A stretch of 64,000 nt of DNA. Origin: Adineta vaga (Eukaryota; Animalia; Rotifera). The notes under the pieces are model-generated. The model was not told where the DNA came from. It saw only the letters and a list, made by a program, of their open reading frames with translations, and made no database searches. Where the stretch lies: contig CP075497.1 of the NCBI GenBank assembly GCA_021613535.1, positions 12,710,001-12,774,000 of the forward strand, written 5' to 3'. Made by a program: the position numbers and the translations under genes. The first letter of the stretch is position 1; each line of letters opens with the position of its first letter. Of the stretch, positions 3,701-57,304 are shown piece after piece.

Positions 3701-6700
3701 CGACTGTGGCGGGTTTGCTTGGTTTGAGTGTCTTGCCTGATTTAGAGGTGACTTTCTTTGTTGGAGCAGCAGATGCTGGTTTCTGTGTTGGGGCAGCAGA
3801 TGCTGGTTTCTGTGAAGCCTTAGCACCAGTTGTCTTCTTTTCGTCGCTCTCTGAGCTTGAGCTAGAGTCATCTTCATCTGGTTGATTTTCATTGGTGACT
3901 GTATCGTGCAAGTCCTTGTCCTTGCATGTGTCTTTCAATGAGTCGATCACTTGTTTTTGTTGGGCTTTACCACATGGAAGTTTATAGTGGAATTCAGTTG
4001 CTTTCTTGTCACCAGCTGTCTTCACGATTTGTACTTTATCGGTGAATTTGACACCGAGTTTGTTGAGACGGCCATGGAGAAGGTTAGTGAGGGTACCACC
4101 GACATTGCCGCATCGAGATGGTTTACGAGCGAAACGTGTTGCATGACATCCACCGACACGGATGACACCTGTAACTGTGTTCTCGTCTTGAGCTTGAACT
4201 TTGTGGTCTTTGTCGCAATCGACTGTGGCGGGTTTGCTTGGTTTGAGTGTCTTGCCTGATTTCGATGTGACTTTCTTGGTTGGAGCGGCTGTTGCTGGTT
4301 TCTGTGTTGGAGCAGCAGATGCTGGTTTCTGTGTTGGAGCAGCAGATGCTGGTTTCTGTGTTGGGGCAGCAGATGCTGGTTTCTGTGAAGCCTTAGCACC
4401 AGTTGTCTTCTTTTCGTCGCTCTCTGAGCTTGAGCTAGAGTCATCTTCATCTGGTTGATTTTCATTGGTGACTGTATCGTGCAAGTCCTTGTCCTTGCAT
4501 GTGTCTTTCAATGAGTCGATCACTTGTTTTTGTTGGGCTTTGCCGCATGGAAGTTTGTAGTGGAATTCAGTTGCCTTCTTGTCACCAGCTGTCTTCACGA
4601 TTTGAACTTTGTCGGTGAATTTGACACCGAGTTTGTTGAGACGGCCATGGAGAAGGTTGGTGAGGGTACCACCGACATTACCGCATCGAGATGGTTTACG
4701 AGCGAAACGTGTTGCATGACATCCACCGACACGGATGACACCTGTGACTGTGTTGTCGTCTTGAGCTTGAACTTTGTGGTCTTTGTCGCAATCAACTGTG
4801 GCAGGTTTGCTTGGTTTGAGTGTCTTGCCTGATTTCGATGTGACTTTCTTTGTTGGAGCAGCAGTTGCTGGTTTAGCTGTGTTGGAGCAGCAGATGCTGG
4901 TGTTGGGCAGCAGATGCTGGTTTCTGCTTTTTGTGAAGCCTTAGCACCAGTTGTCTTCTTTTCGTCGCTCTCTGAGCTTGAGCTAGAGTCATCTTCATCT
5001 GGTTGATTTTCATTGGTGACTGTATCGTGCAAGTCCTTGTCCTTGCATGTGTCTTTCAATGAGTCGATCACTTGTTTTTGTTGGGCTTTGCCGCATGGAA
5101 GTTTGTAGTGGAATTCAGTTGCCTTCTTGTCACCAGCTGTCTTCACGATTTGAACTTTGTCGGTGAATTTGACACCGAGTTTGTTTAGACGGCCGTGGAG
5201 AAGATTGGTGAGGGTACCACCGACATTACCGCATCGAGATGGTTTACGAGCGAAACGTGTTGCATGACATCCACCGACACGGATGACACCTGTAACTGTG
5301 TTGTCGTCTTGAGCTTGAACATTATGATCTTTGTCGCAATCAACTGTGGCAGGTTTGCTTGGTTTGAGTGTCTTGCCTGATTTTGATGTAACAGCCTTGG
5401 TTGGAGCAGCTGTTGCTGGTTTGGCTGTTGTTGGAGCAGCGGTAGCTGGAGCAGCTGTGGCTGCTTTTTGTGTAGCCTTAGCACCAGTTGTCTTCTTTTC
5501 ATCACTCTCAGAGCTTGAGCTAGAGTCATCTTCATCTGGTTGATTTTCATTGGTGACTGTATCGTGCAAGTCCTTGTCCTTGCATGTGTCTTTCAATGAG
5601 TCGATCACTTGTTTTTGTTGGGCTTTGCCGCATGGAAGTTTGTAGTGGAATTCAGTTGCTTCTTGTCACCAGCTGTCTTCACGATTTGAACTTTGTCGGT
5701 GAATTTGACACCGAGTTTGTTGAGACGGCCGTGGAGAAGATTGGTGAGGGTACCACCGACATTACCGCATCGAGATGGTTTACGAGCGAAACGGGTTGCA
5801 TGACATCCACCGACACGAATGACACCTGTGACTGTGTCGTCTTGAGCTTGAACTTTATGATCTTTGTCGCAATCAACTGTGGCAGGTTTGCTTGGTTTGA
5901 GTGTCTTGCCTGATTTCGATGTGACTTTCTTTGTTGGAGCAGCAGTTGCTGGTTTAGCGGTTGTTGGAGCAGCGGTTGCTGGAGCAGCTGTGGCTGCTTT
6001 TTGTGTAGCCTTAGCACCAGTTGTCTTCTTTTCGTCACTCTCAGAGCTTGAGCTAGAGTCATCTTCATCTGGTTGATTTTCATTGGTGACTGTATCGTGC
6101 AAGTCCTTGTCCTTGCATGTGTCTTTCAATGAGTCGATCACTTGTTTTTGTTGGGCTTTGCCGCATGGAAGTTTGTAGTGGAATTCAGTTGCCTTCTTGT
6201 CACCAGCTGTCTTCACGATTTGAACTTTGTCGGTGAATTTGACACCGAGTTTGTTTAGACGGCCGTGGAGAAGATTGGTGAGGGTACCACCGACATTACC
6301 GCATCGAGATGGTTTACGAGCGAAACGTGTTGCATGACATCCACCGACACGGATGACACCTGTGACTGTGCTGTCGTCTTGAGCTTGAACTTTGTGGTCT
6401 TTGTCGCAGTCGACTGTGGCAGGTTTGCTTGGTTTGAGTGTCTTGCCTGATTTCGATGTGACTTTCTTTGTTGGAGCAGCAGTTGCTGGTTTTTGTGTTG
6501 CCGCAGCAGTTGCTGGAGCAGCTGTGGCTGCTTTTTGTGTAGCCTTAGCACCAGTTGTCTTCTTTTCATCACTCTCAGAGCTTGAGCTAGAGTCATCTTC
6601 ATCGGGTTGATTTTCATTGGTGACTGTATCGTGCAAGTCCTTGTCCTTGCATGTGTCTTTCAATGAGTCGATCACTTGTTTTTGTTGGGCTTTGCCGCAT

Positions 6701-9700
6701 GGAAGTTTGTAGTGGAATTCAGTTGCCTTCTTGTCACCAGCTGTCTTCACGATTTGAACTTTGTCGGTGAATTTGACACCGAGTTTGTTTAGACGGCCGT
6801 GGAGAAGATTGGTGAGGGTACCACCGACATTACCGCATCGAGATGGTTTACGAGCGAAACGTGTTGCATGACATCCACCGACACGGATGACACCTGTGAC
6901 TGTGTTGTCGTCTTGAGCTTGAACTTTGTGGTCTTTGTCGCAATCGACTGTGGCAGGTTTGCTTGGTTTGAGTGTCTTGCCTGATTTCGATGTGACTTTC
7001 TTTGTTGGAGCAGCAGTTGCTGGTTTCTGAGTGGCTGGTTTTTGTGTTGGTGCAGCTGTGGCTGCTTTTTGTGTAGCCTTAGCACCAGTTGTCTTCTTTT
7101 CATCACTCTCAGAGCTTGAGCTAGAGTCATCTTCATCTGGTTGATTTTCATTGGTGACTGTATCGTGCAAGTCCTTGTCCTTGCATGTGTCTTTCAATGA
7201 GTCGATCACTTGTTTTTGTTGGGCTTTGCCGCATGGAAGTTTGTAGTGGAATTCAGTTGCCTTCTTGTCACCAGCTGTCTTCACGATTTGAACTTTGTCG
7301 GTGAATTTGACACCGAGTTTGTTTAGACGGCCGTGGAGAAGATTGGTGAGGGTACCACCGACATTACCGCATCGAGATGGTTTACGAGCGAAACGTGTTG
7401 CATGACATCCACCGACACGGATGACACCTGTGACTGTGCTGTCGTCTTGAGCTTGAACTTTGTGGTCTTTGTCGCAGTCGACTGTGGCAGGTTTGCTTGG
7501 TTTGAGTGTCTTGCCTGATTTCGATGTGACTTTCTTTGTTGGAGCAGCAGTTGCTGGTTTAGCGGTTGTTGGAGCAGCGGTTGCTGGAGCAGCTGTGGCT
7601 GCTTTTTGTGTAGCCTTAGCACCAGTTGTCTTCTTTTCATCACTCTCAGAGCTTGAGCTAGAGTCATCTTCATCTGGTTGATTTTCATTGGTGACTGTAT
7701 CGTGCAAGTCCTTGTCCTTGCATGTGTCTTTCAATGAGTCGATCACTTGTTTTTGTTGGGCTTTGCCGCATGGAAGTTTGTAGTGGAATTCAGTTGCCTT
7801 CTTGTCACCAGCTGTCTTCACGATTTGAACTTTGTCGGTGAATTTGACACCGAGTTTGTTGAGACGGCCATGGAGAAGGTTGGTGAGGGTACCACCGACA
7901 TTGCCGCATCGAGATGGTTTACGAGCGAAACGTGTTGCATGACAGCCACCGACACGAATGACACCTGTGACTGTGTTATCGTCTTGCGATTGGACTTTGT
8001 GGTCTTTGTCGCAATCAACTGTGGCAGGTTTGCTTGGTTTGAGTGTCTTGCCTGATTTTGATGTAACAGCCTTGGTTGGAGCAGCTGTTGCGGGTTTCTG
8101 TGTTGGTGCAGCTGTTGCTGGTTTGGCTGTTGTTGGAGCAGCGGTTGCTGGAGCAGCTGTGGCTGCTTTTTGTGTAGCCTTAGCACCAGTTGTCTTCTTT
8201 TCATCACTCTCAGAGCTTGAACTAGAGTCATCTTCATCGGGTTGATTTTCCTTGGTGCATGTATCGTGCAAGTCCTTGTCCTTGCATGTGTCTTTCAATG
8301 AGTCGATCACTTGTTTTTGTTGGGCTTTACCACATGGAAGTTTGTAGTGGAATTCAGTTGCTTTCTTGTCACCAGCTGTCTTCACGATTTGAACTTTGTC
8401 GGTGAATTTGACACCGAGTTTGTTGAGACGGCCTTGGAGAAGGTTGGTGAGGGTACCACCGACATTGCCGCATCGAGATGGTTTACGAGCGAAACGTGTT
8501 GCATGACAGCCACCGACACGAATGACACCTGTGACTGTGTTATCGTCTTGCGATTGGACTTTGTGGTCTTTGTCGCAATCAACTGTGGCAGGTTTGCTTG
8601 GTTTGAGTGTCTTGCCTGATTTCGATGTGACTGCCTTGGTTGGAGCTGCAGTTGCTGGTTTGGCTGTTGTTGGAGCAGCGGTTGCTGGTTTGGCGGTTGT
8701 TGCAGCGGCAGTTGCTGGTTTGGCGGTTGTTGCAGCGGCAGTTGCTGGTTTGGCGGTTGTTGCAGCAGCAGTTGCTGGTTTAGCTGTTGAGGCTGCAGTG
8801 TTTCCGGGTTTTCCGGATGCACGTGTGGTTTCTTCGGAACTACTGCTGTCGCTGTCATCATCATCGTCGCGTTTGAGCGACTCTTTTTCAATGGTTTTCT
8901 TCACCTAAAGGGAAGTTTATTGAGGAATTATTTCGTCGTGAGAGAATAAAGTTTTTTTTTGGAAGTTATGTTATGTATAAAATTTGCCGTGGTATAGGTC
9001 AAATTTGTTTTTTTTAAGCTTGAATGAGCAGAGACTGTTAGTCTGGTGTTGAATTCGTTTGTTTTGCTGTCTTGTTTTTGTTCTGTTAACGTGTGAAAGT
9101 AGAGTGGGATGATATGCTAGATTTTTTTCTCACAGTTTTCGTTTAATGTCATGTCGGTTTAGGTAGAATTCAGCGTGAAAATGCTTGTTGTGCGGAAAAA
9201 GGTATCCATGTACTTTACTGTGGTTTTGCGTTAGGAAGGGTGCCTAGTGCTGTGGAATGGGTGGCACGATTGAGATCAACAGATGATCGCTTCGTGGTTT
9301 ATACTAGTTTTGATTAGACATTCTATAGCACGATCGCTTTCAGTTTCGAAAGGTGTCGTCACTTATGTTTGTTAATCAATCGTGCTGTCGTTTTCACATT
9401 AACATATTCACGAAATAGTAGGAAAAAGACTACGAAGTTATGAAAGGTTTGCGAAAGTTTACCGCTTACGTGATCGTTCGGTTCCCTTACGCACCTTTCG
9501 TTTGCGGCGCAGTTTCTTTTGTAAAATTTTGTTTTTACGAACCTCATTCGGTCGATCACTATATAAGTATGCCAAAGCGAGACTTTTCTTCCGGCGTGTA
9601 ATTGTTATAATTATTCTTTTGCCGAACGGGTGCATGTAAATGAAAGTTTTAGTAAACTAGCCGTGTCGTAGGGTCGAAAGACACAGTGTAGTTGTATTTT

Positions 9701-12700
9701 TCGATGATTTTCTCACTGCACTGTTGTCAATTGAATAGAGAAAGTTCTAAAAGCGAGAGCGGTTTTAGCGTTGGAAACGTTCTCTTCTGAGGTCAGGTAT
9801 AGTTCTAGAGTACCCAAACTCTTTCTAATATAAGCAGGATGATGCTCCGTAAACAAGGGCGTCCAGTGTCAGATCACGTGATTAAATGTAAGTGTCAGAT
9901 AAAGAATGTTGAGGTAGAGCTAAATATTGAGATTCAGTTTAGTAGCGTTTGTACAAATTCTGCCGATAGAGATGCGTTCATACAGCGAGAAGATTTTTTG
10001 ACATAACAAAAATAACTAGTGATTTGATTCTTAAAACTGAGAAGATGTCTTTGCTATGGGTAATCAGTTTAACATGGGATACGAGCGTAATTTCGTAACG
10101 CCTTTTTATCAGGAAAATATGATGTTTCATGAAAACTTAATATTTGGAAAGCTTTTGAACTTATGGAAGACATGAGCAATGTTGCCCAATGCGTGATGGA
10201 CAAGAATGAACTATTCCGAACACGAAAACGGTACGTATATAAGTACAACCGAAATGATACACTGATACTAGTACTTCGAATATTCTGCTCGTTTTTTATA
10301 GCAAGTTCAAACTGTTCTTTGGGAAACTGAAATATGCATTATCAGCTGTGATCTGTTCGGAAGATATGAATGTCACACGACGATTCATCAAAAAACTCAA
10401 AACAGGAAATTACATAAATCTGAAAAGCTTACGTCTTTCCTATTATAGAATCTTTGTCATGTACATCATCAAATTACCGATTTCTTCGGAGTTTGATGAC
10501 TATTCTGCTTGATTACACTCATAATGTTTCAATCTAGTATTATAAACTCTGAGTTTCCAGCTAGTTAAATACTTCTGACAGAAGATCTACGATGGATCTG
10601 CTTTTGCCTGAAATAGGCGATTTAGAATTCATTATTCTTACCTCGTCATCTTTACATGTTTTCTTCAAAGCTGCTTTTGCTTTTGATTGTTCTGCTTTTG
10701 GTACATTAACAGTGTACGAAAATACAGTGTGTGTTTTGTTTCCAGTAAGAACTTTTACACTACATGGATAATTAACCTTTGTACCATGGAGCTGTTGGAA
10801 GTAGTTTCGAAGTTGTGTACAAACAGTTGATGAAAGAGCAGCAAGACGTGTTGCATTGTTAGCAAATCGTTTTTCGCAAGGACAATCTTGAACAACAATT
10901 TTACCAGTTAATGTCTGATCTTGTTCTTCAATATCATCGTCATCGCAATTCTTGACTTGAACTGTGCGTGTGGTTGCTGGTGGTCTCTTTGTTACACCGG
11001 CTTGAGTAGGTTTCTTTGTAGCTAGAAAATCAATGAAATTATAATTATTTAAACTGTAGTCTTTGTTTGGACAGAAACCTATGTAAGATCATATCTCTTC
11101 CTGAAAAGTGTGTTTTTACTTTCCATAGTGAAAACATAAGAAACTAGGAGATCTATGCGAGATACCTCAGTTACTGGTCGATATCTCATTATAGAGGGTG
11201 GGCTCTCAGTTAATTGGTGACAAGAAATTTAAATATTTCAATTATCTGTAAAAACTCACCGAGTAAAAACTATTATAAGTATTACAGATTAACTTAAAGG
11301 TTTTGTCACAAGAGAAACATTAGTGAACAGAAATACAAGTTAGTGAACTCGACGGAAAAACGTTTTCATGCATTTTTAGACGCTCTGAGATGGATTGATG
11401 TGTGTGAATGGAGACCAAACATTTAGCATTTGGTCACGATCAGGCCCATTCTCAAAATGCGCAACGTATTTCACTTGTTGTGTTCGAGATTCATTTAACA
11501 AAACCTTTCTACAAAAGTAGGTTGATCGTGAATTTAACCCACTGGCCTCTCAGATCCCATTCTTTCATACTAACTGGTCACTTTCTCAGGAAATATTCCT
11601 AAAAATATTTAGAACCAAAACAAGCTTGCAGATACTCATCAGCCGAACCACTCAATAAACCCATGGTATTCAACATTAAATTCTGAACCATACCCGAAAA
11701 GGTCTCAAAAAGTAAACCAAGGTCTATAGATATTAATTCAAACACTGCATTACTCATGAAAAATTTCACCTTATTTAACACTTAGCACGATCGAAAATTT
11801 TACACTTCTTATTAAACATTTTTTCATGGTATACTTTCTACACATATCATAAACTGAAGTACGTAAAATAATCAAATCGATATTCACCAACTAACTTTGG
11901 ATCGCTATAAATGGCAACATAATTTCTATTTAATCTTAAAACTTCTGAAGACAGTGAAACTTTAGAAAACTTACTTGTCTTCACTGTAGTTTTGGCTGTT
12001 GTTGGTTTTTCGGTAGGTTTGGCTGTCGTGGCCTTTTCCGTAGCAGCAGCCGTGGCTGCCTTTTGTGTAGCCTTAGCACCAGTTGTCTTCTTTTCATCAC
12101 TCTCAGAGCTTGAGCTAGAGTCATCTTCATCGGGTTGATTTTCCTTGGTGCATGTATCGTGCAAGTCCTTGTCCTTGCATGTGTCTTTCAATGAGTCGAT
12201 CACTTGTTTTTGTTGGGCTTTACCACATGGAAGTTTATAGTGGAATTCAGTTGCTTTCTTGTCACCAGCTGTCTTCACGATTTGAACTTTGTCGGTGAAT
12301 TTGACACCGAGTTTGTTGAGACGGCCTTGGAGAAGGTTGGTGAGGGTACCACCGACATTGCCGCATCGGGATGGTTTACGAGCGAAACGTGTTGCATGAC
12401 AGCCACCGACACGAATGACACCTGTGACTGTGTTATCGTCTTGCGATTGGACTTTGTGGTCTTTGTCGCAATCAACTGTGGCAGGTTTGCTTGGTTTGAG
12501 TGTCTTGCCTGATTTCGATGTAACAGCCTTGGTTGGAGCAGCTGTTGCGGGTTTCTGTGTTGGTGCAGCTGTTGCTGGTTTGGCTGTTGTTGGAGCAGCG
12601 GTTGCTGGAGCAGCTGTGGCTGCACCAGTTGTCTTCCATCACTCTCAGAGCTTGAACTAGAGTCATCTTCATCGGGTTGATTCTCCTTGGTGCATGTATC

Positions 12701-15357
12701 GTGTAAGTCCTTGTCCTTGCATGTGTCTTTCAATGAGTCGATCACTTGTTTTTGTTGGGCTTTGCCGCATGGAAGTTTGTAGTGGAATTCAGTTGCCTTC
12801 TTGTCACCAGCTGTCTTCACGATTTGAACTTTGTCGGTGAATTTGACACCGAGTTTGTTGAGACGGCCTTGGAGAAGGTTGGTGAGGGTACCACCGACAT
12901 TACCGCATCGAGATGGTTTACGAGCGAAACGTGTTGCATGGCATCCACCGACACGGATGACACCTGTGACTGTGTTATCGTCTTGTGTTTGAACTTTGTG
13001 GTCTTTGTCGCAATCAACTGTGGCAGGTTTGCTTGGTTTGAGTGTCTTGCCTGATTTCGATGTGACTGCCTTGGTTGGAGCTGCAGTTGCTGCTTTGGCT
13101 GTTGTTGGAGCAGCCGTAGCTGGAGCAGCTGTGGCTGCTTTTTGTGTAGCCTTAGCACCAGTTGTCTTCTTTTCATCACTCTCAGAGCTTGAACTAGAGT
13201 CATCTTCATCGGGTTGATTTTCCTTGGTGCATGTATCGTGCAAGTCCTTGTCCTTGCATGTGTCTTTCAATGAGTCGATCACTTGTTTTTGTTGGGCTTT
13301 ACCACATGGAAGTTTATAGTGGAATTCAGTTGCTTTCTTGTCACCAGCTGTCTTCACGATTTGAACTTTGTCGGTGAATTTGACACCGAGTTTGTTGAGA
13401 CGGCCTTGGAGAAGGTTGGTGAGGGTACCACCGACATTGCCGCATCGGGATGGTTTACGAGCGAAACGTGTTGCATGACAGCCACCGACACGAATGACAC
13501 CTGTGACTGTGTTATCGTCTTGCGATTGGACTTTGTGGTCTTTGTCGCAATCAACTGTGGCAGGTTTGCTTGGTTTGAGTGTCTTGCCTGATTTCGATGT
13601 AACAGCCTTGGTTGGAGCTGCAGTTGCTGGTTTGGCTGTTGTTGGAGCCGCCGTCGCTGGTTTGGCGGTTGTTGGTTTTTCTGTTGGTGCAGCCGTTGCT
13701 TTTTGTGTTGCTACAGGTTTCACTGGAGCACCTGTTGCTTCTTCCGAGCTGCTACTATCACTATCATCATCACCATCACGTTTAATTGATTCTTTTTCAA
13801 TGGTTTTTTTTACCTGAATTGAAACATGATATTAAAAAATTATTAATTTTTTGTTTCTTATCATTCGAAGTCAATTTAGAATTCATTATTCTTACCTCGT
13901 CATCTTTGCATGTTTTCTTCAAAGCTACTTTTGCTTTTGATTGTTCTGCTTTTGGTACATTAACAGTGTACGAAAATACAGTATGTGTTTTGTTTCCAGT
14001 AAGAACTTTTACACTACATGGATAATTAACCTTTGTACTATAAAGCTGTTGGAAGTAGTTTCGAAGTTGTGTACAAACAGTTGATGAAAGAGCAGCAAGA
14101 CGTGTTGCATTGTTAGTAAATCGTTTTTCGCAAGGACAGTCTTGAACAACAATTTTACCGGTTAATGTCTGATCTTTTTCTTCAATATCATCGTCATCGC
14201 AGTTCTTAACTTGAACTGTACGTTTGGTAGCTGGAGCTTTCTTCGGTGCACCAGTTTTGGTTGTTTTACCTTGAGCTAAATAATAAAAAGTGGAATAAAA
14301 CAGTTCATGAATGTACTTGAGTAAAGAGAAATCGGAATCTTTTCTGAAAAAAATCGATTGATTGAAATTTTTTGTGTGAAAATTTTATTTTGTATGACAT
14401 ATATCATTGCCCTTTATTGTCTTGGAATGAATCTCTTCGTTCTGATTGGGAAATGGAAATGGTAGTATTCAGTACTAACTTGTTTTAACTGTTGTTGGAG
14501 CAGCAGTTTGTTTTGTAGTGATGACAACTTTTTCGGTTGTTCTTGGTGCTTCTTTTTGAGTAACTTTGGGTGCTTGTGTTGTTGTTGTTGTTGGTTTGGG
14601 TGCTTGTGTTGTTGTTGTTGTTGGTTTTGGTGCTTGTGTTGTTGTTGTTGTTGTTGTTGGTTTTGGTGCTTGTGTTGTTGTTGTTGATGGTTTTTGTGTT
14701 GAAGCTTTAGCTAAAAAGAAGAAATCTGATATAGTGAAAAGAGTTTTTTTGTAATAAAAATAAAGTTCGAGTATAGAAGAAGATTTAAGTAATTAATTTT
14801 GATGATAAATTGAAAATTAAAAATCTTGAGAAATGAAATAAAATTCACTAACTTTGTTCTGTTGTTTGTTTTTTAGCTTGAGTTGTTTGAACATTAACAG
14901 CTGATTTTTGAATTGTTTTTTTTACATCATCCTGTTTCACACATGTATTCAAAACAGTTTTAGCTGTTTCAGGATTTTTCGCTGCTGTACATTCATAATC
15001 CAAAGCAAGCATTCCATCGCCTAGATCTCTGACACCAGTAACACTAACTTTTGAAGCAGAATTCTTTGAATCATCAGCTTGAACTTTTTGAGTTAATGTT
15101 TTTGATAAAGAATCTTTCGATTGGGAAAGAGAATCTTTATCACAATTAGCGATAACCATTGTACCTCTTAAATTTTCACCTTTATTAACAACCATATGAG
15201 CATTAACTTCTGCTGTTTTTACAGAAGTGGCTTTGAAAGAAGAGAAAAGAAATTAAATAAAGTTAAAGAATAAGATAAAATTATTACTTGCAAATGAACA
15301 TGTTGGGATTTGGAGAAAAGCAATTGCAGATAAAAGAACGAAGAATGTCGTTTTCAT
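729..15357 (-). CDS. Giant secreted modular mucin-/adhesive-like protein (about 3,800 aa in window, 7 exons, 3 apparent frameshift sites, probably continues past window start)
   Basis: ATG at 15357 gives signal peptide MKTTFFVLLSAIAFLQIPTCSFA. GT-AG exons in consistent phase: 15357-15288, 15230-14853, 14710-14480, 14275-13896, 13813-11975, 11021-10642, 8904-752. These join ORFs 14848..15195, 12275..13723, 11847..12278, 5605..8904, 4595..5608 and 729..4598. A phase-1 A|GTAAG donor at 751, like those ending the other linker exons, precedes the nominal stop at 729. Confidence 0.85.
760..3270 (-). repeat. Coding tandem array of 14 units (186-bp/62-aa and 138-bp/46-aa variants), HGTTKSGQPTKGGKASSESDEKKSSKQPKPAGTTKAAEPSKATGAP[QGTTKAAQPSKATAAP]
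   Basis: Near-identical units read directly in ORF 729..4598 and in the DNA. Confidence 0.95.
3290..8640 (-). repeat. Coding tandem array of 10 copies (about 520-570 bp period) of Cys-containing module A plus acidic Ser patch and T/A/P/K linker
   Basis: Repeated PSKPATVDCDKDHKVQ...GGCHATRFARKPSRCGNVGG...HYKLPCGKAQQKQVIDSLKDTCKDKDLHDT followed by QPDEDDSSSSSESDEKK. Confidence 0.95.
10642..11021 (-). repeat. Duplicated exon encoding module B (paralog at 13896..14275)
   Basis: Both 380-bp exons encode ...VQVKNCDDDDIEE-DQTLTGKIVVQDCPCEKRF...KKTCKDDE with near-identical DNA and the same GTAAGAATAATGAATTCTAAAT donor flank. Confidence 0.9.
12050..13640 (-). repeat. Second coding array: 3 more copies of module A (LLQGRL/DTCTKE variant)
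   Basis: ORFs 12275..13723 and 11847..12278; these copies share diagnostic variants with the first copy of the 8904 exon. Confidence 0.93.
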
Positions 15358-43043: not shown

Positions 43044-43544
43044 AACGTCGCTTTTTTCTTTTCAATTTACTTCAATAAAAAGAAATTTCTACTATTCAAT
43101 TTCGAATCTTACTAAGATTGACTTCAGATTAATTTAAACGTTGTTTAATAATAGAACAGTTACCTTATTATCGAAAAATACAGATTTATAATGAGAAATG
43201 TATTCTTTAGAATACTTTGATGAATAATCGCAAATAACGGAGTATTGTTTTTCTTCTCCGCATTTTCTATGAAAACGAAATTGTTTATTTGTATATTTAT
43301 ATCTATATGAGAAGAAAAAAATAACATTCCTAGCATAATCAACCTACCTATAGGTCATTTTTTCGGTGAGAAACCGAATTTTATTTTCGAATGAATACCT
43401 GGAAAGCTATCTTGTAATTATAATGATAAAAGCAGTGGAGCACGAAAAATATCTTCAATGAAGAAATAAAACTATATAATATTGAGATACAAATCAAGTA
43501 TTCAATTCTTTTTATAGCATATAAATCGATCATTTGTGTGTACA

Positions 43545-44099
43545 ATGGCAAACGATAAAGCAAAAGTTGATGAAAAAATAAACATGCACGATGTAGCTGC
43601 TGATTGGTTCTTTCAACAATATTATCATAGTGAAACACGGCCATATCATACACTTTACCATGATTATACGAAAACATTAATGAATTTAGCCGGAGCTGAT
43701 GGTGTATTAGCTGACAAAGAACGTCAATGGATCTTAGGTAATCTAGCAGCAAAAGGTGGCGATGAAAAAATGTACAATTTTTTCAAAACATATATGCCAA
43801 GTAAAGAGGATCTTGAGAAAATAATCAAAGAAAAACCAGGATTTACTGAAGTCGTATCTCGATCAACTATTTTCGACGCATTCATAGCTGCTTCCGCTGA
43901 CAATGAATTACACAAAGACGAACGAGATGCTATCTATCGATTGGGGCATACCATGGGCTTAGAAGATACACTTTTACAACAAATTGAAGATATGGCTGCT
44001 CGAGAAAAATCTCATCGACTTCAAGTTCTTAATCTTGTGTTTCCACAAGGTTTACAACATGCATGTGATACAGCCATTGTGGATTATAAGAATAATTAA
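43545..44099 (+). CDS. TerB/DjlA-N-like helical protein (bacterial-type), intronless
   Basis: Duplicated TerB motifs LMNLAGADGVLADKERQWI and AFIAASADNELHKDERDAIYRLGHTMGL. Confidence 0.75.
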   Translation: MANDKAKVDEKINMHDVAADWFFQQYYHSETRPYHTLYHDYTKTLMNLAGADGVLADKERQWILGNLAAKGGDEKMYNFFKTYMPSKEDLEKIIKEKPGFTEVVSRSTIFDAFIAASADNELHKDERDAIYRLGHTMGLEDTLLQQIEDMAAREKSHRLQVLNLVFPQGLQHACDTAIVDYKNN

Positions 44100-50316: not shown

Positions 50317-52379
50317 TTAATTGTCTGATTGTAAATGTTGAATTCTTTCTCTGTTTAATCGATCACGTTCTATAATACTATCTGTTATTAAATCAATATC
50401 TTTAAGTGGAATAAATTTTGTTTTGTTAACATATTTGTAAATAAAAAACATTAAAACGATTACGGGTAAAATAACATAACCAGATAGAAATGTTTGAACA
50501 TTAAATGCTGTTTTTGTACATGTCGAATTTCCAGTTTCAAATAGAAATCGATCAAATTTATATGTAGAAAAATTTTCTTCTTCAGCTAAATGTGTACAAT
50601 TATATTTTACTGTGGAAAATGCTGAATAACCTTGTCCAAAAACACAAATTAAAATAAGTAACGAAGCTAGAAATGGTCCAACTGGAAAGAACAAAGCTTT
50701 ATAAACTAAATCATTTAATGAATAACCTTGTAAAATATATGCACGACGAAATCTCCAATGTGATATAGCAATACCAAACCAAGCAATAAAACCCATAACA
50801 CTTGTCATATTAACTAACCAAATATAAATAACTTGATTTCCAACAAATGATAAACCAAATAAAGCTGTTGCTAAAATTGTTGTTAACATTAAACAATAAA
50901 TTGGTATTCCACCTTTTGTTAAATGACGAAATATTTTTGGTGCTTTTCCTTCATTAGCTAATGTCCAAAATATTCTTGTACATAAATAAAGACCTGAATT
51001 ACCAGCTGATAAAATCGTTGTTAAAATGACAACATTCATAATATGATCAGCACCGGGAATACCTGAACGACTAAATACTAATGTAAATGGTGACACAGCT
51101 ATACTATCAACACCATTGATTTTACTTAAATGTTCATCATTATATGGAATAATTAAACCCATAATAAAAATAGCACCAACAAAAAATAAAATAATACGCC
51201 AAATAGTTCCATTCATTGCACGTGGAACATCTTTTTTAGGATTGGAACTTTCACCAGCAGCTATTCCAACTGCTTCTGTTCCCTAAAATTTATATTTTAT
51301 TTAAAGAAAATAGAAATCTCTTTTCTTCTTACTTGAAAAGCAAAACCAGAAATAATCGATGTTGTAATGACTCCTGAAACACCACCAACAAAAGGTGCAC
51401 CTTCTATTTTCCAATTTTCAAAACCAATTGTTTTTCTTGGTTTTCCAATTGCACCTGCATCAACTAAAACGCCAACAAGTAAAAAGATAAGTACAGTTAC
51501 AACTTTGATCATTGCAAACCAATATTCTGCTTCGCCATAACCTTTAACTGTAAATGCATTTAATAAAAACATAACTAACATTCCTAATATTGACCAAATT
51601 ATTGAAGGAAAATGTGGTAACCAATATTGAACAATAAGACCAGCAGCAACTAATTCACCTGCAATTGTTGTTACCCAAGAAAAATAATAATTATATGCTA
51701 AAGCAAATCCAAATGCTTCATCAACAAAACGACTTCCAAATGTATTAAATGAACCACTGATTGGATATTGTGTTGCTAATTCAGCTAAGAGAAAAAAAAG
51801 AAAGATAAATTCATTTGTACAAATATAGATAAAACTAAACACGAACCTAAACTAGTCATAACAAAATAAACCATAACAGATATAATTAAATAAGAGATTA
51901 GAGAACCAGCAGGTCCAGCAGATGCTAATGCTTGTCCTGATGCTAAAAATAATCCAGTTCCAATAGTTCCACCTAATGCAATCATTATCATATGTCGTTC
52001 TTGTAAATTTCGATGTAAATCTTTTTTATCTCCTTCAATTAAATTGTTCGTATCAGAATATTCATTTGCATAGGGATTATCCGCATCGTCATTTAATGAA
52101 TTTTTTCGTAAAAAATTTGGAATTAACTTTTGAAGAAAAGTTTTCTAAAATAAAACGAAATTATTAATTAAAAAAAACGTTTATTATTATTACTTGAGAC
52201 GATCTTTTAGTTAATTGAGTTTCATTTATGAATGTACTATCATCATTTGTAGGTAATCCCGATATGACACTAATCTTAAAAGAAAAATGATAAATCAATT
52301 AAAAGATTTTATTTTTTTTGTAACTTACTGGAATTCCATTTGTACTTAAACTAGTGGTTAATTGAGAATTTGTTTTCAT
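50317..52379 (-). CDS. Amino acid permease, APC superfamily (LysP / yeast AAP type), with introns
   Basis: LQERHMIMIALGGTIGTGLFLASG, ELATQYPISGSF...RFVDEAFGFA, YGEAEYWFAMIKV, FAFQGTEAVGIAAGESSNP, SPFTLVF, LSAGNSGLY, HWRFRRAY. Confidence 0.93.
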
Positions 52380-53176: not shown

Positions 53177-54424
53177 ATGAGTTACGTTGACAATAATGAT
53201 ATTATTGATATAGCGATTATTGGTGGTGGAATAAGTGGTTTAGTAACTGCATTATATTTATCTCGTTTAAATATTAGAATTCGTTTATATGAACAATCAG
53301 AACATATTGATACAGTTGGTTTTGGTTTAAATCTTCAACCATATTGTGTAAAATGTCTTTATGAACTTGGTTTAGAAAATCAATTAAATGATGTTGGAAT
53401 TAAAACAAAAAAAGCTTTATTTTATTCTCGTCATGGTCAATTTATATTTGAAGATCTTCGTGGTTTAGATGGTGGTTATTCATATCCAATGTATTCAATA
53501 CATCGTGGATATTTACATCAAATATTATTTTATCAATTACAAAAACTAGGTGATGAATTTATCATTCAACTTTCACATAAATTAATTGAATTTAATAATA
53601 AATCAAATCATATTGAAATTCAATTTTTAAATACAAAAACAAATCAAAGAAAATTAATTCAAACAAAATTATTAATTGGTGCTGATGGAATTAATTCATT
53701 AGTTAGAAAATTCTTTTATCCAAATGAAGGTTTACCCGTTTGGAAAGGTCTTCAAATTTGGCGTGGAATAACACATGTTGAAAAAACTTATTTAGATGAA
53801 AAAACAATGATTTGTATGGGTAATCCAGATACAAAATATTTTATTATGTATCCAATAAGTAATAATCTTATTAATTGGGCTTGTGTTTTAAGAATTCAAG
53901 AAAATAATCACAATATATCTTTATCAACAAATAGTATTGATTGGAATAATAAAGGTTTTTATCAAGATTTTCTTTCCTTAATTAAAGAAATGAAACTTGA
54001 TTTTATTGATATTAAACAATTAATTAAATCATCAATAAATATAAATCAATTTCCAATAACAGATCGTGAACAAATTCCTCGATGGACATTTAATTGTGTT
54101 ACTTTAGTTGGTGATGCAGCACATCCAATGTATCCAAATGGAGGAAATGGAGCATCACAAGCAATATTAGATGCTCAACAATTATATTATTCTCTTTTAA
54201 AATATGGAATTACTAATCAAGCACTTGAAGATTATGAAAATATTCGACGTCCATTAACAGATCAAATTGTTCTTTTAGCACGACAATATGGTCCTGATGA
54301 AATTCTTCGATTGATTGATGATCGTTCACCTAATGAATTTGAAAATTTATCTGATATTATTTCATCAGATGAAATTCAATCAATCTATGAAAATTATCGA
54401 AAAAGAACTGGAGCGAAAAAATAA
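53177..54424 (+). CDS. Group A FAD-dependent monooxygenase (PhzS/salicylate-hydroxylase-like, bacterial type), intronless
   Basis: IAIIGGGISGL, GLNLQP, YSIHRGYLH, LIGADGINSLVR, VTLVGDAAHPMYPNGGNGASQAILDA. Confidence 0.93.
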   Translation: MSYVDNNDIIDIAIIGGGISGLVTALYLSRLNIRIRLYEQSEHIDTVGFGLNLQPYCVKCLYELGLENQLNDVGIKTKKALFYSRHGQFIFEDLRGLDGGYSYPMYSIHRGYLHQILFYQLQKLGDEFIIQLSHKLIEFNNKSNHIEIQFLNTKTNQRKLIQTKLLIGADGINSLVRKFFYPNEGLPVWKGLQIWRGITHVEKTYLDEKTMICMGNPDTKYFIMYPISNNLINWACVLRIQENNHNISLSTNSIDWNNKGFYQDFLSLIKEMKLDFIDIKQLIKSSININQFPITDREQIPRWTFNCVTLVGDAAHPMYPNGGNGASQAILDAQQLYYSLLKYGITNQALEDYENIRRPLTDQIVLLARQYGPDEILRLIDDRSPNEFENLSDIISSDEIQSIYENYRKRTGAKK

Positions 54425-54457
54425 TTTTCTTCTTTTTCAAAAATAAAAAAAGAGTAA

Positions 54458-54529
54458 TGCCTCCACGCAGGATCGAACTACGGACCTCCAGTTTACAAGA
54501 CTGGCGCTCTACCACTGAGCTATAGAGGC
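54458..54529 (-). tRNA. tRNA-Thr (TGT)
   Basis: GCCTCTATAGCTCAGTGGTAGAGCGCCAGTCTTGTAAACTGGAGGTCCGTAGTTCGATCCTGCGTGGAGGCA folds into a cloverleaf; A and B boxes present; T-run Pol III terminator just downstream. Confidence 0.96.
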
Positions 54530-54566
54530 ATATTGACCTTAGATGAATTTGTTTTAGAAAATATTT

Positions 54567-55820
54567 TTATTTTAATTGAAATAAAACACATTCAACAGCA
54601 ATTCCCGGTCCAAATGAAAGACCAACAACATATTTATAACGATTATAATCTTTTGGAAAACTAATATTTTTCTCATTTGGTTTAATTTTCGAATATTTCC
54701 ATCGAATAAAATGTTCCAAAACAACAATATTACTTGATCCACTAAGATTTCCATAATTATACATAACATACCATGATGCACATAATTGTTCATCATCTAA
54801 ATTTAAACAATCTTTTATTCCACGAATAATTTTTGGTCCACCTGTATGAACAACAAATTGACAATGATAAATATTAATATCATATTGTTTTAATAAATTT
54901 GATACAAAATTTGGAAGAAAATTAAAAACAGCATAAGGTAATTGTTTATCTAAATAAAGATGAATACTTGAATCATTAAATTCTTTTAAACAACCTAATT
55001 CTAATGTATTTGGTATAATTGATGAACGATGATCAAGAATTTGACAATAAATTCCATTAGATAATGTTTGTTTTTGTGAAAATATTGCTGCACCAGATGA
55101 ATCACGAAAAAGTGCTGAAATAATAACATTTGATTTATCAATTGATTGTTTTGATTGAAATGATGTTAATTGATTTCCCAATGCTGATCGAATATCAGAT
55201 ACAATTAATAAAACAATATTTTTATCTGATTCTAATGTTATATTATGACATAAACCAATTAAACGAAAACCAGTTAAACATCCCATTGATTCAACATTTA
55301 ATCGTTTAATATTTGAATTTAATTGAAGTTCTTTAACAAGATAAATATCCATTGATGGTGCTGCAATTGTTCCTGTCATTGTTCCAAAAATAATATGTGT
55401 TATATCATTTGTATTTAAATGAAAACAATTTTCAATTGCATTTCTTGCTGATTGACAAGATATATTTAATAAAGTCTTTTTAACATAATTTGTATATTCT
55501 TCACGTTTCATTCTTCGAAATAAATCATTTTCATTTAAATTTACATGACTTTTTTCAATCATTGATGCTTGAAATACTCGATTAATAAAATCCAAATCTT
55601 TTGAAAGTAAATTTTCTTCTCCACCACAATAATTTTCTATAAACATTTGTTTCATTTGATTTTGTGAATAAGAATTTAATGGAAATGAACATGATAAACC
55701 ATTAATATAAACTTTTCTTTTATAAATGAATTTCTTTTTTATTAATTGATAAATTCGATATAATAATGATGATGTTCCAATTGTTATTGCTAAATAAAAA
55801 AACATTTTTTCATTTTTCAT
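54567..55820 (-). CDS. Type III polyketide synthase (chalcone/alkylresorcinol synthase family), intronless, with hydrophobic N-terminal segment
   Basis: Catalytic Cys (VESMGCLTG), His (VVHTGGPKI) and Asn (YGNLSGSS); DITHII, SALFRDSSGA, GLSFGPGIAVE. Confidence 0.92.
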   Translation of the reverse strand: MKNEKMFFYLAITIGTSSLLYRIYQLIKKKFIYKRKVYINGLSCSFPLNSYSQNQMKQMFIENYCGGEENLLSKDLDFINRVFQASMIEKSHVNLNENDLFRRMKREEYTNYVKKTLLNISCQSARNAIENCFHLNTNDITHIIFGTMTGTIAAPSMDIYLVKELQLNSNIKRLNVESMGCLTGFRLIGLCHNITLESDKNIVLLIVSDIRSALGNQLTSFQSKQSIDKSNVIISALFRDSSGAAIFSQKQTLSNGIYCQILDHRSSIIPNTLELGCLKEFNDSSIHLYLDKQLPYAVFNFLPNFVSNLLKQYDINIYHCQFVVHTGGPKIIRGIKDCLNLDDEQLCASWYVMYNYGNLSGSSNIVVLEHFIRWKYSKIKPNEKNISFPKDYNRYKYVVGLSFGPGIAVECVLFQLK

Positions 55821-56136: not shown

Positions 56137-56520
56137 ATGAATGAAACTCTTGAAGAAAAATATGATGATAAACAAATCAAGAAAATAATTAGTGAAATTA
56201 TTGAATTAACAATTGGTTATCAATCTTATCAAGCAACAAAAATGAATCAATGGACATCAAATATTGTTGAAATGATTTTAGATTCAATTATACAATTAAA
56301 TAATAAATATAAATATATTATTCAATGTGTTATTATGCAAAAAAAGAATTCAGCTCTTCATACAACAAGTTCATGTTTTTGGGATTATGATGAAGATTAT
56401 TCATCAACATTTCAGTAAGATTTGAGTTTTTTCTTTTAGAAGGTTTTTATTTGATTTAATTTTAGTTGGGAAAATCAATCAATGTATGCTGTTGTATCAG
56501 TTTTTGCTTTAAAGATTTAA
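56137..56520 (+). CDS. Dynein light chain, Tctex-1 family
   Basis: YKYIIQCVIMQKKNSALHTTSSCFWD..D, then after an intron WENQSMYAVVSVFAL. Confidence 0.9.
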
Positions 56521-56716: not shown

Positions 56717-57304
56717 ATGTTGAAAATTATTGGAATTTTTTTCTTCTTTTTTCTTCTCAATTCGTCTGAATGTGTTAATCGAACATATTTAATAAAAAAA
56801 GATTTAATTAGTGGTCTGAAAGGTGGAGAATTTACAATTTATGATGCTGAAGGAAAGAAAGCTTTATATCGAATGGAATCAAAATTAGGTGCTCTTCATC
56901 ATGTTCGATTATTTGAAGGTTTAACAAAAAAAAATCCAATTGGTTTATTAAAATCAAAAATAAGTGTAGTTTTATATAAAGGTAATATTGCGATTTTAAA
57001 TAAAAAATCTAATCAATGGAATAATGGAACACTTAATCAAAATTATAAAATTGTTGGAAATAAATTTGTATTAAATTTTAATTCAAATGATATTGTCATG
57101 GAAGGTAAAGCAGCATCATTTGATACAACATTTATTGATCAATCAACAAAAGAAATTTTAGCAAAATTTCGTAAGAGAATTTCGTCATTATTTTGGAAGA
57201 ATAAATATGATTTACAAGTTTTATCAAATAAATTTCCGGATGAAGTTTATTTCTTGGCTGTTGCTGCAAGAGATCATACCAATAAAAAAATTCATTCTGG
57301 TTAA
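56717..57304 (+). CDS. LURP-one-related / tubby C-terminal-like protein with signal peptide
   Basis: Hydrophobic leader; YLIKKD, FTIYDAEGK.ALYRM, ILAKFRKR..LFW.NKYDLQV, terminal helix YFLAVAARD. Confidence 0.65.
   Translation: MLKIIGIFFFFFLLNSSECVNRTYLIKKDLISGLKGGEFTIYDAEGKKALYRMESKLGALHHVRLFEGLTKKNPIGLLKSKISVVLYKGNIAILNKKSNQWNNGTLNQNYKIVGNKFVLNFNSNDIVMEGKAASFDTTFIDQSTKEILAKFRKRISSLFWKNKYDLQVLSNKFPDEVYFLAVAARDHTNKKIHSG

What the first reader, a model, noticed from the sequence alone, without database searches (positions are those of the whole stretch)
53177..55820. Candidate mini biosynthetic cluster in an animal genome: type III PKS and flavin monooxygenase converging on a tRNA gene
Seen: two intact, intronless genes with host-like AT-rich codons lie tail-to-tail, 142 bp apart, with tRNA-Thr between them. 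The PKS keeps its Cys-His-Asn triad and the monooxygenase keeps all three FAD motifs. Established: type III PKSs are typical of plants, fungi and bacteria rather than animals. In Streptomyces srsABC a type III PKS makes alkylresorcinols that a flavoprotein hydroxylase modifies. Inference: this pair may make hydroxylated phenolic lipids or pyrones (membrane stabilisers, antioxidants or antimicrobials) in a microinvertebrate. The convergent layout argues against a directly inherited operon, so the two genes may have been brought together in the host.
Basis: partly seen in the sequence, partly recalled or inferred. Interest (0 to 1): 0.85.

Follow-up and report, generated by a model that had tools for sequence, protein, structure and literature searches.

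The report
Rotifer type III PKS beside monooxygenase
A bdelloid rotifer (Adineta) carries an intact, apparently transcribed plant/microbe-type polyketide synthase that all sampled bdelloids share. The bacterial-type flavin monooxygenase beside it came from a different donor and is its neighbour only in two close species, so a two-gene pathway is possible but unsupported.

Summary
Window 53177-54424 (+) encodes a 415-aa PhzS-like FAD monooxygenase. Window 54567-55820 (-) encodes a 417-aa type III PKS with its Cys-His-Asn triad. They lie tail-to-tail, 142 bp apart, with tRNA-Thr(UGU) at 54457-54530 (-) between them.

The genome is a six-chromosome Adineta assembly, most probably A. vaga. Both genes are intronless, as AT-rich as the host, and under purifying selection. 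Contigs of three presumed RNA studies cover them.

The cluster interpretation is only weakly supported.
- The PKS is an old bdelloid gene, found in Adineta, Rotaria, Didymodactylos and about 40 bdelloid-like metagenome sequences. Its nearest outside relatives are microbial eukaryotes.
- The monooxygenase belongs to a separate, bacterial-derived bdelloid family.
- The old synteny frame is LOR – PKS – tRNA-Thr – variable slot – amino-acid permease.
- The monooxygenase touches the PKS only in A. vaga and A. ricciae.
- In A. steineri the PKS is intact, while the orthologous monooxygenase sits on another contig and carries stop codons.
- The Rotaria species and three metagenome contigs have the PKS without it.

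Best reading: two independently acquired genes, juxtaposed recently. I put coupling of the two enzymes at about 0.2. I found no paper describing the PKS family, which carries an N-terminal membrane-anchor-like helix.

The parts
53177..54424 (+). Intronless gene for a 415-aa group A FAD-dependent aromatic monooxygenase, PhzS-like (PRK07538 subfamily), of bacterial ancestry
   Evidence: PDB best hit is PhzS (2rgj/3c96) at 5.5e-62 over residues 8-374. The bdelloid family is sister to bacterial homologues. dN/dS against A. ricciae is 0.29.
54457..54530 (-). Nuclear tRNA-Thr(UGU) gene followed by a T-run, on the same strand as the PKS and just downstream of it. It is an old syntenic landmark.
   Evidence: ARAGORN. 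The sequence is identical downstream of the PKS in A. ricciae, A. steineri and metagenome contig L039. At least 10 copies exist in the genome.
54567..55820 (-). Intronless gene for a 417-aa type III polyketide synthase with an N-terminal hydrophobic helix plus basic cluster (putative membrane anchor, residues about 3-35)
   Evidence: PDB best hit is Steely1 (2h84) at 1e-27. The AF2 model has pLDDT 88.5, helix 3-31 and TM 0.74-0.77 to type III PKSs. N-terminal analysis is. dN/dS is 0.36.
56137..56418 (+). Tctex-1 dynein light-chain exon, a host (metazoan) neighbour upstream of the PKS. Syntenic in A. ricciae.
   Evidence: Pfam Tctex-1 at 2e-21; tblastn 78% identity in L001/L002.
56717..57304 (+). 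LOR (LURP-one-related)-like gene. It neighbours the PKS in A. ricciae, A. steineri, L037-L039 and L058.
   Evidence: The Pfam LOR match in the window copy is weak.
50317..51991 (-). Amino-acid permease gene, intron-split and seen as three ORFs. It is head-to-head with the FMO. The FMO also neighbours this gene in contigs L029 and L030, and L039 has it 7 kb from the PKS.
   Evidence: Pfam AA_permease at 1.8e-49; ORFs.

Best explanation
This is a bdelloid rotifer (Adineta, most probably A. vaga) chromosome-6 locus, about 1.1 Mb from the chromosome end. It holds two independently acquired, domesticated foreign genes that became immediate neighbours only recently.

(1) The type III PKS was acquired once, before the sampled bdelloids diverged, from a microbial-eukaryote-like lineage. 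It is kept under purifying selection and carries an N-terminal signal-anchor-like helix. By inference it sits on an internal membrane with its catalytic domain in the cytosol. There it would condense a fatty-acyl-CoA starter with malonyl-CoA, through its Cys-His-Asn triad, into an alkylpyrone, alkylresorcinol or acylphloroglucinol-type phenolic lipid.

(2) The FMO belongs to a bacterial-derived, PhzS-like family of NAD(P)H/FAD aromatic hydroxylases that duplicated within bdelloids. By inference it hydroxylates, possibly with decarboxylation, a small aromatic substrate. That substrate could be endogenous or a microbial xenobiotic.

The ancestral order is LOR – PKS – tRNA-Thr – variable slot – amino-acid permease. 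In the A. vaga/A. ricciae lineage, loss of the intervening gene(s) and an inversion left the FMO abutting the tRNA, giving the convergent pair.

Shown: gene identities, intactness, phylogenetic placement, synteny pattern and the decayed second copy. Inferred: substrates, membrane location, and that the two enzymes need not work together.
For: Identity and integrity.

Host genome:
- The assembly has 6 contigs and 100.8 Mb, and the window is C6:12.71-12.77 Mb of 13.89 Mb.
- The flanks are metazoan genes (Tctex-1, an intron-split permease, a kinase, CRAL-TRIO).
- The best named hits are A. ricciae at 81-82%.

The PKS is old in bdelloids: a 44-row clade (SH-aLRT 99) includes Adineta, Rotaria and Didymodactylos. 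Its sister rows are unnamed eukaryote contigs (L057 carries F-box and WD40 fragments), followed by Plasmodiophora, a chytrid and Phalansterium.

The FMO has a separate origin: a bdelloid family of 31 rows (SH-aLRT 100) is sister to bacterial enzymes at 38-42% identity.

Synteny:
- A. ricciae has the same layout as the window.
- A. steineri has LOR … PKS, then tRNA-Thr 1.4 kb downstream, then a methyltransferase, with no FMO.
- The A. steineri FMO orthologue is on another contig, with two aligned nonsense codons and a lost GxGxxG start.
- Rotaria and Didymodactylos have the PKS without the FMO.
- L039 reads LOR – PKS – PARP/Ank – tRNA-Thr – Gpr1/YaaH – FkbM methyltransferase – permease.
- L058 reads LOR – PKS – PARP/Macro.
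- L029 and L030 read FMO then permease, with the FMO in the opposite orientation to A. vaga.

Selection: dN/dS is 0.36 for the PKS and 0.29 for the FMO against A. ricciae.

Transcription: contigs of three small, presumed-RNA studies cover 53192-55791 but not the flanks, which the DNA run does cover.

Membrane anchor: an N-terminal hydrophobic stretch followed by a basic cluster is conserved across the bdelloid clade and in a related GC-rich eukaryotic clade. The model shows a helix at 3-31.

Fatty-acyl bias: the closest solved relatives are Steely1, alkyldiketide-CoA synthase, CylI and Pks18/Pks11. Relatives are named alkylresorcinol/alkylpyrone synthase by JGI.
Against: - The adjacency is very tight (142 bp). 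It survived about 18-19% protein divergence between A. vaga and A. ricciae, even though synteny breaks immediately beyond the FMO (AAP in A. vaga, a PARP/VIT/VWA gene in A. ricciae). Selection for linkage could produce that pattern.
- Type III PKS plus flavin hydroxylase is a recurrent functional pairing. Examples are srsABC-type operons (PMC13730376) and PKS-FMO fusion or adjacent genes in a distant PKS clade (P0107/L033, P0112, L045).
- The FMO lies in the same LOR-to-permease neighbourhood in at least two other bdelloid-like contigs, so looser linkage may be older than I can show.
- The RNA status of the runs is a guess by the tool, so expression is not proven.
- Substrate inferences rest on distant homology (23% identity to Steely1).
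Confidence: 0.6

Rival explanations
1. This is a genuine two-gene pathway assembled in the host. In the A. vaga/A. ricciae lineage the PhzS-like FMO was recruited next to the PKS and hydroxylates (or decarboxylatively hydroxylates) its resorcinol, resorcylic-acid or pyrone product. The result would be a hydroxyquinol- or quinone-type phenolic lipid, analogous to SrsA/SrsC.
For: - The convergent pair, 142 bp apart, is conserved in both A. vaga and A. ricciae, with a synteny break just outside it.
- Both genes are under purifying selection.
- Both are covered by the same presumed-RNA contig sets.
- PKS + FAD_binding_3 fusions or adjacent pairs occur in related PKS lineages.
- There is a srsABC precedent.
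- PhzS chemistry acts on an aromatic carboxylate.
Against: - The PKS is retained intact where this FMO is absent, unlinked or pseudogenised: A. steineri, Rotaria, L039 and L058.
- The two genes have different donors.
- The FMO domains of the fusion proteins are only 22-25% identical to this FMO, so they are a different subfamily.
- A convergent layout shares no promoter.
- No methyltransferase, ligase or exporter lies nearby.
Confidence: 0.2
2. One or both genes are functionless relics on the way to decay, as happened to the second genomic copy.
For: - The duplicated (ohnologous) segment LOR-Tctex-PKS on C3:459.6-461.5 kb is shattered by deletions and stops.
- Only a 142-bp FMO fragment survives, at C4:526.35 kb.
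- The A. steineri FMO orthologue is a pseudogene.
- dN/dS of 0.29-0.39 is not very low.
Against: - Both window ORFs are full length with all catalytic and cofactor motifs.
- dN/dS is well below 1.
- The PKS is intact in every named bdelloid genus sampled.
- Presumed transcript contigs cover both genes.
Confidence: 0.07
3. The pair comes from contaminating microbial DNA, or the assembly is chimeric at the tRNA.
For: Both genes are intronless and have non-metazoan relatives. The multi-copy tRNA breaks short-read contigs at this site (depth spike).
Against: - The locus lies inside a 13.9-Mb chromosome, between metazoan, intron-containing genes.
- GC matches the host.
- Half-depth alternative bases occur in the DNA run.
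- A 2186-bp contig bridges FMO, tRNA and PKS in another run.
- The same layout appears in two independent A. ricciae assemblies.
Confidence: 0.01

Closest known systems
Steely1 (StlA) C-terminal type III PKS domain of Dictyostelium discoideum (PDB 2h84) and fatty-acyl-primed type III PKSs (alkylresorcinol/alkylpyrone synthases such as SrsA, ArsB/C, Pks18, Pks11, CylI)
   Same: - Chal_sti_synt N and C domains, the Cys-His-Asn triad and an SFGPG loop.
- Thiolase fold, with TM 0.74-0.77.
- Steely1 is the best solved sequence match, at 1e-27.
   Different: - Only about 23% identical to Steely1.
- A stand-alone protein, not fused to a type I FAS/PKS.
- Carries an N-terminal hydrophobic anchor-like helix.
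- Encoded in an animal genome.
- The product is unknown.
PhzS of Pseudomonas aeruginosa (PDB 2rgj/3c96), the flavin monooxygenase that converts 5-methyl-PCA to pyocyanin; NCBIfam PRK07538 subfamily
   Same: Full-length match at 5.5e-62, with the same FAD motifs and the same single-component group A architecture. It scores above the curated PRK07538 cutoff.
   Different: - No phenazine pathway is evident here.
- The nearest bacterial relatives are uncharacterised 'flavin-dependent oxidoreductases' of Bacillales and others, at 38-42% identity.
- The family has duplicated inside bdelloids.
srsABC-type alkylresorcinol operons of Streptomyces and other bacteria (type III PKS + O-methyltransferase + flavoprotein hydroxylase)
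   Same: A type III PKS lies next to a FAD-dependent aromatic hydroxylase. This gives a plausible scheme of phenolic-lipid scaffold plus hydroxylation (PMC13730376).
   Different: - Not an operon: the genes are convergent, with a Pol III tRNA gene between them.
- No methyltransferase is present.
- The two genes have different phylogenetic sources.
- Linkage is confined to two species.
- Orthology of the FMO with SrsC was not tested.
Horizontally acquired NRPS/PKS clusters of bdelloid rotifers (Nowell et al. 2024, PMC11258130) and the HGT-candidate chalcone/stilbene-synthase-like gene of the ctenophore Mnemiopsis (PMC6005172)
   Same: These are foreign biosynthetic genes domesticated in an animal genome, located toward chromosome ends in A. 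vaga.
   Different: - The published bdelloid inventory covers modular, phosphopantetheine-dependent synthetases.
- Its main text does not contain 'type III' or 'chalcone'.
- I found no listing of this locus. Supplementary Data 9 (file 12), which holds the Av13/Av20 cluster re-annotation, was cut when stored, so a listing cannot be excluded.
- This enzyme is a small ACP-independent type III PKS.

Membership tests
Type III polyketide synthase (chalcone/stilbene synthase superfamily) | Chal_sti_synt_N and Chal_sti_synt_C domains above Pfam gathering scores | tested here: met
   45.1 and 57.5 bits against a cutoff of 27
Type III polyketide synthase (chalcone/stilbene synthase superfamily) | Catalytic Cys-His-Asn triad | tested here: met
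   C181, H325 and N358 are invariant in 20 bdelloid-type sequences. They lie in the MGCL, HTGG and GN(L/M)S motifs aligned with Steely1.
Type III polyketide synthase (chalcone/stilbene synthase superfamily) | Thiolase-type alpha-beta-alpha-beta-alpha fold resembling solved type III PKSs | tested here: met
   The AF2 model has pLDDT 88.5. All of the top 50 Foldseek hits listed are type III PKSs, with E about 1e-31 to 1e-32 and TM 0.72-0.77.
Type III polyketide synthase (chalcone/stilbene synthase superfamily) | Iterative decarboxylative condensation of malonyl-CoA on a CoA-linked starter; homodimer | not testable with these tools
   Needs an enzyme assay. No complex prediction was run.
Group A flavoprotein monooxygenase, PhzS-like (NCBIfam PRK07538) | Whole-protein score above the curated cutoff | tested here: met
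   414.7 bits against a cutoff of 400, covering residues 14-417 of the 418-aa ORF
Group A flavoprotein monooxygenase, PhzS-like (NCBIfam PRK07538) | GxGxxG dinucleotide fold, DG motif and GD motif for FAD/NAD(P)H | tested here: met
   GGGISG, GADGINS and GDAAHPMYP are present and aligned to PhzS.
Group A flavoprotein monooxygenase, PhzS-like (NCBIfam PRK07538) | Substrate (phenazine carboxylate) and hydroxylative decarboxylation | not testable with these tools
   Only homology is available. No phenazine genes were seen in the window.
srsABC-like type III PKS biosynthetic gene cluster | PKS and tailoring genes co-transcribed or co-oriented, including a methyltransferase | tested here: not met
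   The genes are convergent with a tRNA gene between them. No methyltransferase lies within about 10 kb.
srsABC-like type III PKS biosynthetic gene cluster | Linkage of PKS and hydroxylase conserved across relatives that keep the PKS | tested here: not met
   Linked only in A. vaga and A. ricciae. Unlinked or absent in A. steineri, three Rotaria species, Didymodactylos, L034-L039 and L058.
srsABC-like type III PKS biosynthetic gene cluster | Co-expression of the genes | tested here: inconclusive
   Presumed-RNA contigs cover both genes in 3 studies. However, contigs give no levels or strand, and the RNA status is only guessed.
Horizontally acquired gene in a bdelloid rotifer | Nearest non-bdelloid relatives are non-metazoan, and the gene is physically embedded among host genes | tested here: met
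   PKS: protists, a chytrid and unnamed eukaryotes. FMO: bacteria. No other animal appears among the named hits. The flanks are Tctex-1 and an intron-split permease.

The most novel reading that the evidence does not exclude
Bdelloid rotifers have kept, since before their radiation, a membrane-anchored type III polyketide synthase that makes phenolic lipids in an animal. In the A. vaga/A. ricciae lineage it has been joined by a bacterial PhzS-like hydroxylase. That would be a two-gene pathway built de novo inside an animal genome from genes of two different donor domains.
Probability: 0.15. Interest if true: 0.75.

Novelty: new member of a known kind. Interest (0 to 1): 0.45.

Why it matters
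Type III PKSs are hardly known from animals. I found no paper on the bdelloid family; database records only auto-name these proteins 'chalcone synthase'. The gene is retained across all sampled bdelloid genera, carries a probable membrane anchor and is under purifying selection. That points to a small-molecule (phenolic lipid or pyrone) chemistry in these desiccation- and pathogen-challenged animals, outside the published NRPS/PKS inventory.

The locus also shows how apparent biosynthetic clusters can arise in HGT-rich bdelloid regions. Here, turnover of genes in a slot next to a tRNA gene produced the adjacency, which cautions against reading adjacency alone as a pathway.

Tried and rejected
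- **Bacterial promoter and terminator scan.** It gave fewer hits than shuffled sequence and is irrelevant for a eukaryote.
- **Rosetta-stone argument.** PKS-FAD_binding_3 fusions exist (P0107/L033, P0112, L045). Their FMO domains are only 22-25% identical to this FMO and sit in a distant PKS clade. They are an analogy, not orthologous evidence.
- **Wider cluster.** I looked for one in the window. The neighbours are a permease, kinase, CRAL-TRIO, Tctex-1 and LOR. No ligase, methyltransferase, P450 or exporter is present.
- **Neighbours of other species.** I searched the window for homologues of the L039 and A. steineri neighbours (PARP/Macro, Ank, Gpr1, FkbM, a methyltransferase, an epimerase) and of the A. 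ricciae PARP/VIT/VWA gene. None was found.
- **ESM Atlas feature search.** It returned only generic type III PKS clusters and no finer placement.
- **Nowell et al. 2024.** The main text has no 'type III', 'chalcone' or 'monooxygenase'. A coordinate search in the held supplements found nothing relevant, but some files, including Supplementary Data 9 (file 12) with the cluster re-annotation, were cut when stored.
- **AVAG|g61989.t1.** It carries Steely-derived GO terms in the abiotic-stress HGT table. I could not show that it is this gene, so it counts only as a lead.
- **Not attempted.**
  - No complex prediction, because I do not claim that the proteins bind.
  - Active-site cavity residues were not mapped to product type, because no reference CHS sequence was available by reference.
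Full report
**1. Observation**

- An ORF runs from the ATG at 53177 to 54424 on the + strand and encodes 415 aa.
- An ORF at 54567-55820 on the - strand encodes 417 aa.
- The two face each other tail to tail across 142 bp.
- ARAGORN finds a single tRNA in the 64-kb window, tRNA-Thr(UGU) at 54457-54530 (-), inside that gap.
- The + strand protein matches Pfam FAD_binding_3 (4.5e-24). It exceeds the curated cutoff of NCBIfam PRK07538 (414.7 against 400 bits).
- Its best solved relative is the pyocyanin enzyme PhzS (2rgj/3c96, 5.5e-62, residues 8-374). The GGGISG, GADGINS and GDAAH motifs are aligned.
- The - strand protein matches both chalcone/stilbene-synthase domains.
- C181, H325 and N358 are invariant in an alignment of 20 relatives.
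- Its best solved relative is the type III domain of Dictyostelium Steely1 (2h84, 1.1e-27).
- An AlphaFold model (pLDDT 88.5) superposes on type III PKS structures at TM 0.72-0.77.
- Local GC (25-26%) equals that of the surrounding DNA.

**2. Whose genome**

The assembly has six contigs totalling 100.8 Mb. The window is C6:12,710,001-12,774,000 of a 13.89-Mb contig.

The best named hits for both proteins are Adineta ricciae (81-82% identity), then A. steineri, Rotaria species and Didymodactylos. Earlier notes of this scan call the genome A. vaga.

The neighbours are ordinary animal genes: a Tctex-1 dynein light chain, an intron-split amino-acid permease, a kinase fragment and a CRAL-TRIO protein.

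So this is an animal chromosome, not a contaminant. Three further lines support that:
- A DNA run shows half-depth alternative bases.
- A 2186-bp contig from another run bridges FMO, tRNA and PKS.
- Two A. ricciae assemblies show the same arrangement.

**3. Origins**

In a tree of 112 PKS homologues, the bdelloid-type sequences form one clade of 44 rows (SH-aLRT 99) that includes Didymodactylos.
- Their closest outgroup is a handful of unnamed eukaryotic contigs. One of them, L057, also carries F-box and WD40 fragments.
- Next comes a group with Plasmodiophora, the chytrid Irineochytrium, the amoebozoan Phalansterium and many metatranscriptome sequences.

The FMO tells a different story. A bdelloid family of 31 rows (SH-aLRT 100), split into two subclades, is sister to bacterial 'flavin-dependent oxidoreductases' at 38-42% identity. 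These come from Paenibacillus, Cohnella, Ureibacillus, Variibacter and Panacibacter.

The two genes therefore entered separately, from different kinds of donor. Both trees are quick LG+G4 searches rooted at the midpoint. The direction of transfer is inferred from the absence of other animals among the named hits.

**4.

| Genome or contig | Arrangement |
|---|---|
| A. ricciae | LOR(-) Tctex(-) PKS(+) tRNA-Thr(+) FMO(-), as in the window; then a PARP/VIT/VWA gene that the window lacks |
| A. steineri | LOR … PKS (intact, 421 aa), tRNA-Thr 1.4 kb downstream, then a SAM methyltransferase; no FMO |
| A. steineri FMO orthologue (63% identity) | On another contig, beside a P450; two nonsense codons at aligned positions and no GxGxxG start, so a pseudogene in that assembly |
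| Rotaria sp. Silwood1, R. sordida, Didymodactylos | PKS without the FMO (the Didymodactylos contig L009 is only 4.8 kb, with about 2.1 kb downstream of the PKS). The named Rotaria FMOs fall in the other subclade. |
| Metagenome contig L039 | LOR(-) PKS(+) PARP/Macro + ankyrin(-) tRNA-Thr(+) Gpr1/YaaH(-) FkbM methyltransferase(-) permease(+) |
| L058 (PKS sister to the A. vaga/A. ricciae pair) | LOR, PKS, PARP/Macro |
| L029 (same sample as L058) and L030 | FMO directly upstream of the permease, in the orientation opposite to A. vaga |

The tRNA gene is identical in all four taxa where it was found, and it is followed by a T-run. At least 10 copies exist in the genome.

The old frame is therefore LOR – PKS – tRNA-Thr – variable slot – permease. 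The 142-bp PKS/FMO convergence is a derived state of the A. vaga/A. ricciae lineage.

**5. Second copy**

Bdelloids are known to be degenerate tetraploids (background knowledge). The duplicated segment survives on C3:459.6-461.5 kb as a shattered LOR-Tctex-PKS relic. Its similarity to the window ends inside the tRNA.

Only a 142-bp FMO fragment exists elsewhere, at C4:526.35 kb. So the window holds the only intact PKS of the haploid assembly.

**6. Function**

Both genes are constrained:

| Comparison | dN/dS |
|---|---|
| PKS, A. vaga against A. ricciae | 0.36 |
| FMO, A. vaga against A. ricciae | 0.29 |
| PKS, A. vaga against A. steineri | 0.39 |
| Neighbouring LOR gene | 0.20 |

Contigs from three small assemblies, which the tool guesses to be RNA, cover 53192-55791. 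That is the two genes and the short spacer, but not the upstream flanks, which the DNA run does cover. This fits transcription of both genes with overlapping 3' ends. It is not proof, and it gives no expression levels.

The PKS begins with a hydrophobic stretch followed by a cluster of basic residues.
- The feature is conserved throughout the bdelloid clade, with a Kyte-Doolittle maximum of 1.0-2.5.
- It is also present in a related GC-rich eukaryotic clade.
- It is absent from the 350-aa clade and from the fusion clade.
- The model shows it as a helix at residues 3-31.

From this I infer a membrane-anchored enzyme with its catalytic domain in the cytosol.

The solved relatives that score best are fatty-acyl-primed enzymes: Steely1, alkyldiketide-CoA synthase, CylI and Pks18/Pks11. 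JGI names relatives 'alkylresorcinol/alkylpyrone synthase'. I therefore favour a phenolic-lipid or pyrone product. This is inference from distant homology.

The FMO most likely hydroxylates a small aromatic compound. PhzS hydroxylates 5-methylphenazine-1-carboxylate (PMC7916356).

**7. Is it a cluster?**

For:
- Very tight linkage is kept in two species, with a synteny break just beyond it.
- The srsABC operons are a precedent: SrsA makes alkylresorcinols and alkylpyrones, and SrsC hydroxylates them (PMC13730376).
- PKS-FAD_binding_3 fusions or adjacent pairs occur in a distant PKS clade (L033, P0112, L045).

Against:
- The FMO domains of those fusions are only 22-25% identical to this FMO.
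- The donors differ.
- The PKS is kept wherever this FMO is missing or broken.
- No further pathway genes are nearby.
- The genes share no promoter.

I put functional coupling at about 0.2 and independent roles at about 0.6.

**8. Literature**

Searches of the held library found no paper describing a bdelloid type III PKS.
- Nowell et al. 2024 inventory modular NRP/PKS genes. Their main text contains neither 'type III' nor 'chalcone'.
- Their abiotic-stress table lists AVAG|g61989.t1 with Steely-derived GO terms. I could not tie that model to this locus.
- A chalcone/stilbene-synthase-like HGT candidate has been listed for the ctenophore Mnemiopsis (PMC6005172).

**9. Verdict**

The notable item is the PKS family itself: old, conserved, anchor-bearing and, as far as I could find, undescribed. 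The 'mini cluster' is most likely a recent juxtaposition in a fast-turning slot beside a tRNA gene.

Noticed in passing
G000:C3:459600-461470 (loci L025/L027): A decayed duplicate of the LOR-Tctex-PKS segment, in opposite orientation, with deletions and stop codons. DNA similarity to the window (80-93%) stops inside the tRNA-Thr gene. It is probably the 'type III PKS relic' noted elsewhere in this scan.
   Followed up: partly
G000:C4:526352-526501 (locus L026 9358-9502): An isolated 142-bp fragment, 86% identical to the 5' part of the FMO gene (aa 11-58), on a different chromosome from the PKS relic.
   Followed up: no
L033:1502-4173; L045:323-2455; protein P0112: Unidentified, GC-richer eukaryote-like contigs encode a type III PKS fused to, or directly followed by, a FAD_binding_3 monooxygenase. 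In L033 the FMO half continues after a gap of about 65 bp, probably an intron. This is an independent PKS-hydroxylase association in a distant PKS clade.
   Followed up: partly
L032:9611-10789 (A. steineri CAJNON010000012): The orthologue of the window's FMO has two in-frame stops at aligned codons and lacks the GxGxxG start. It is annotated as a 273-aa fragment and sits beside a cytochrome P450 gene.
   Followed up: partly
L039:11256-16788; L003:11266-15506; L001:13575-20756: The slot downstream of the PKS and tRNA-Thr holds different genes in different bdelloids. L039 has PARP/Macro + ankyrin, Gpr1/Fun34/YaaH and an FkbM methyltransferase. A. steineri has a SAM methyltransferase. A. ricciae has a PARP/VIT/VWA giant gene. 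The region turns over quickly.
   Followed up: partly
window 43536-44099 (+): An ORF of 187 aa with weak TerB/DUF533 (tellurite-resistance-like) matches, at 7e-07 and just under the Pfam cutoff. TerB and DUF533 are mainly bacterial families (my own knowledge), so it may be another foreign-derived gene.
   Followed up: no
window 1-14000: GC is 43-48% with strong negative AT skew, against about 25% in the rest of the window.
   Followed up: no
window 54444: All four runs laid carry one extra A in the homopolymer just after the tRNA, relative to the assembly. It is either a 1-bp assembly error or a fixed difference in a T/A run.
   Followed up: no
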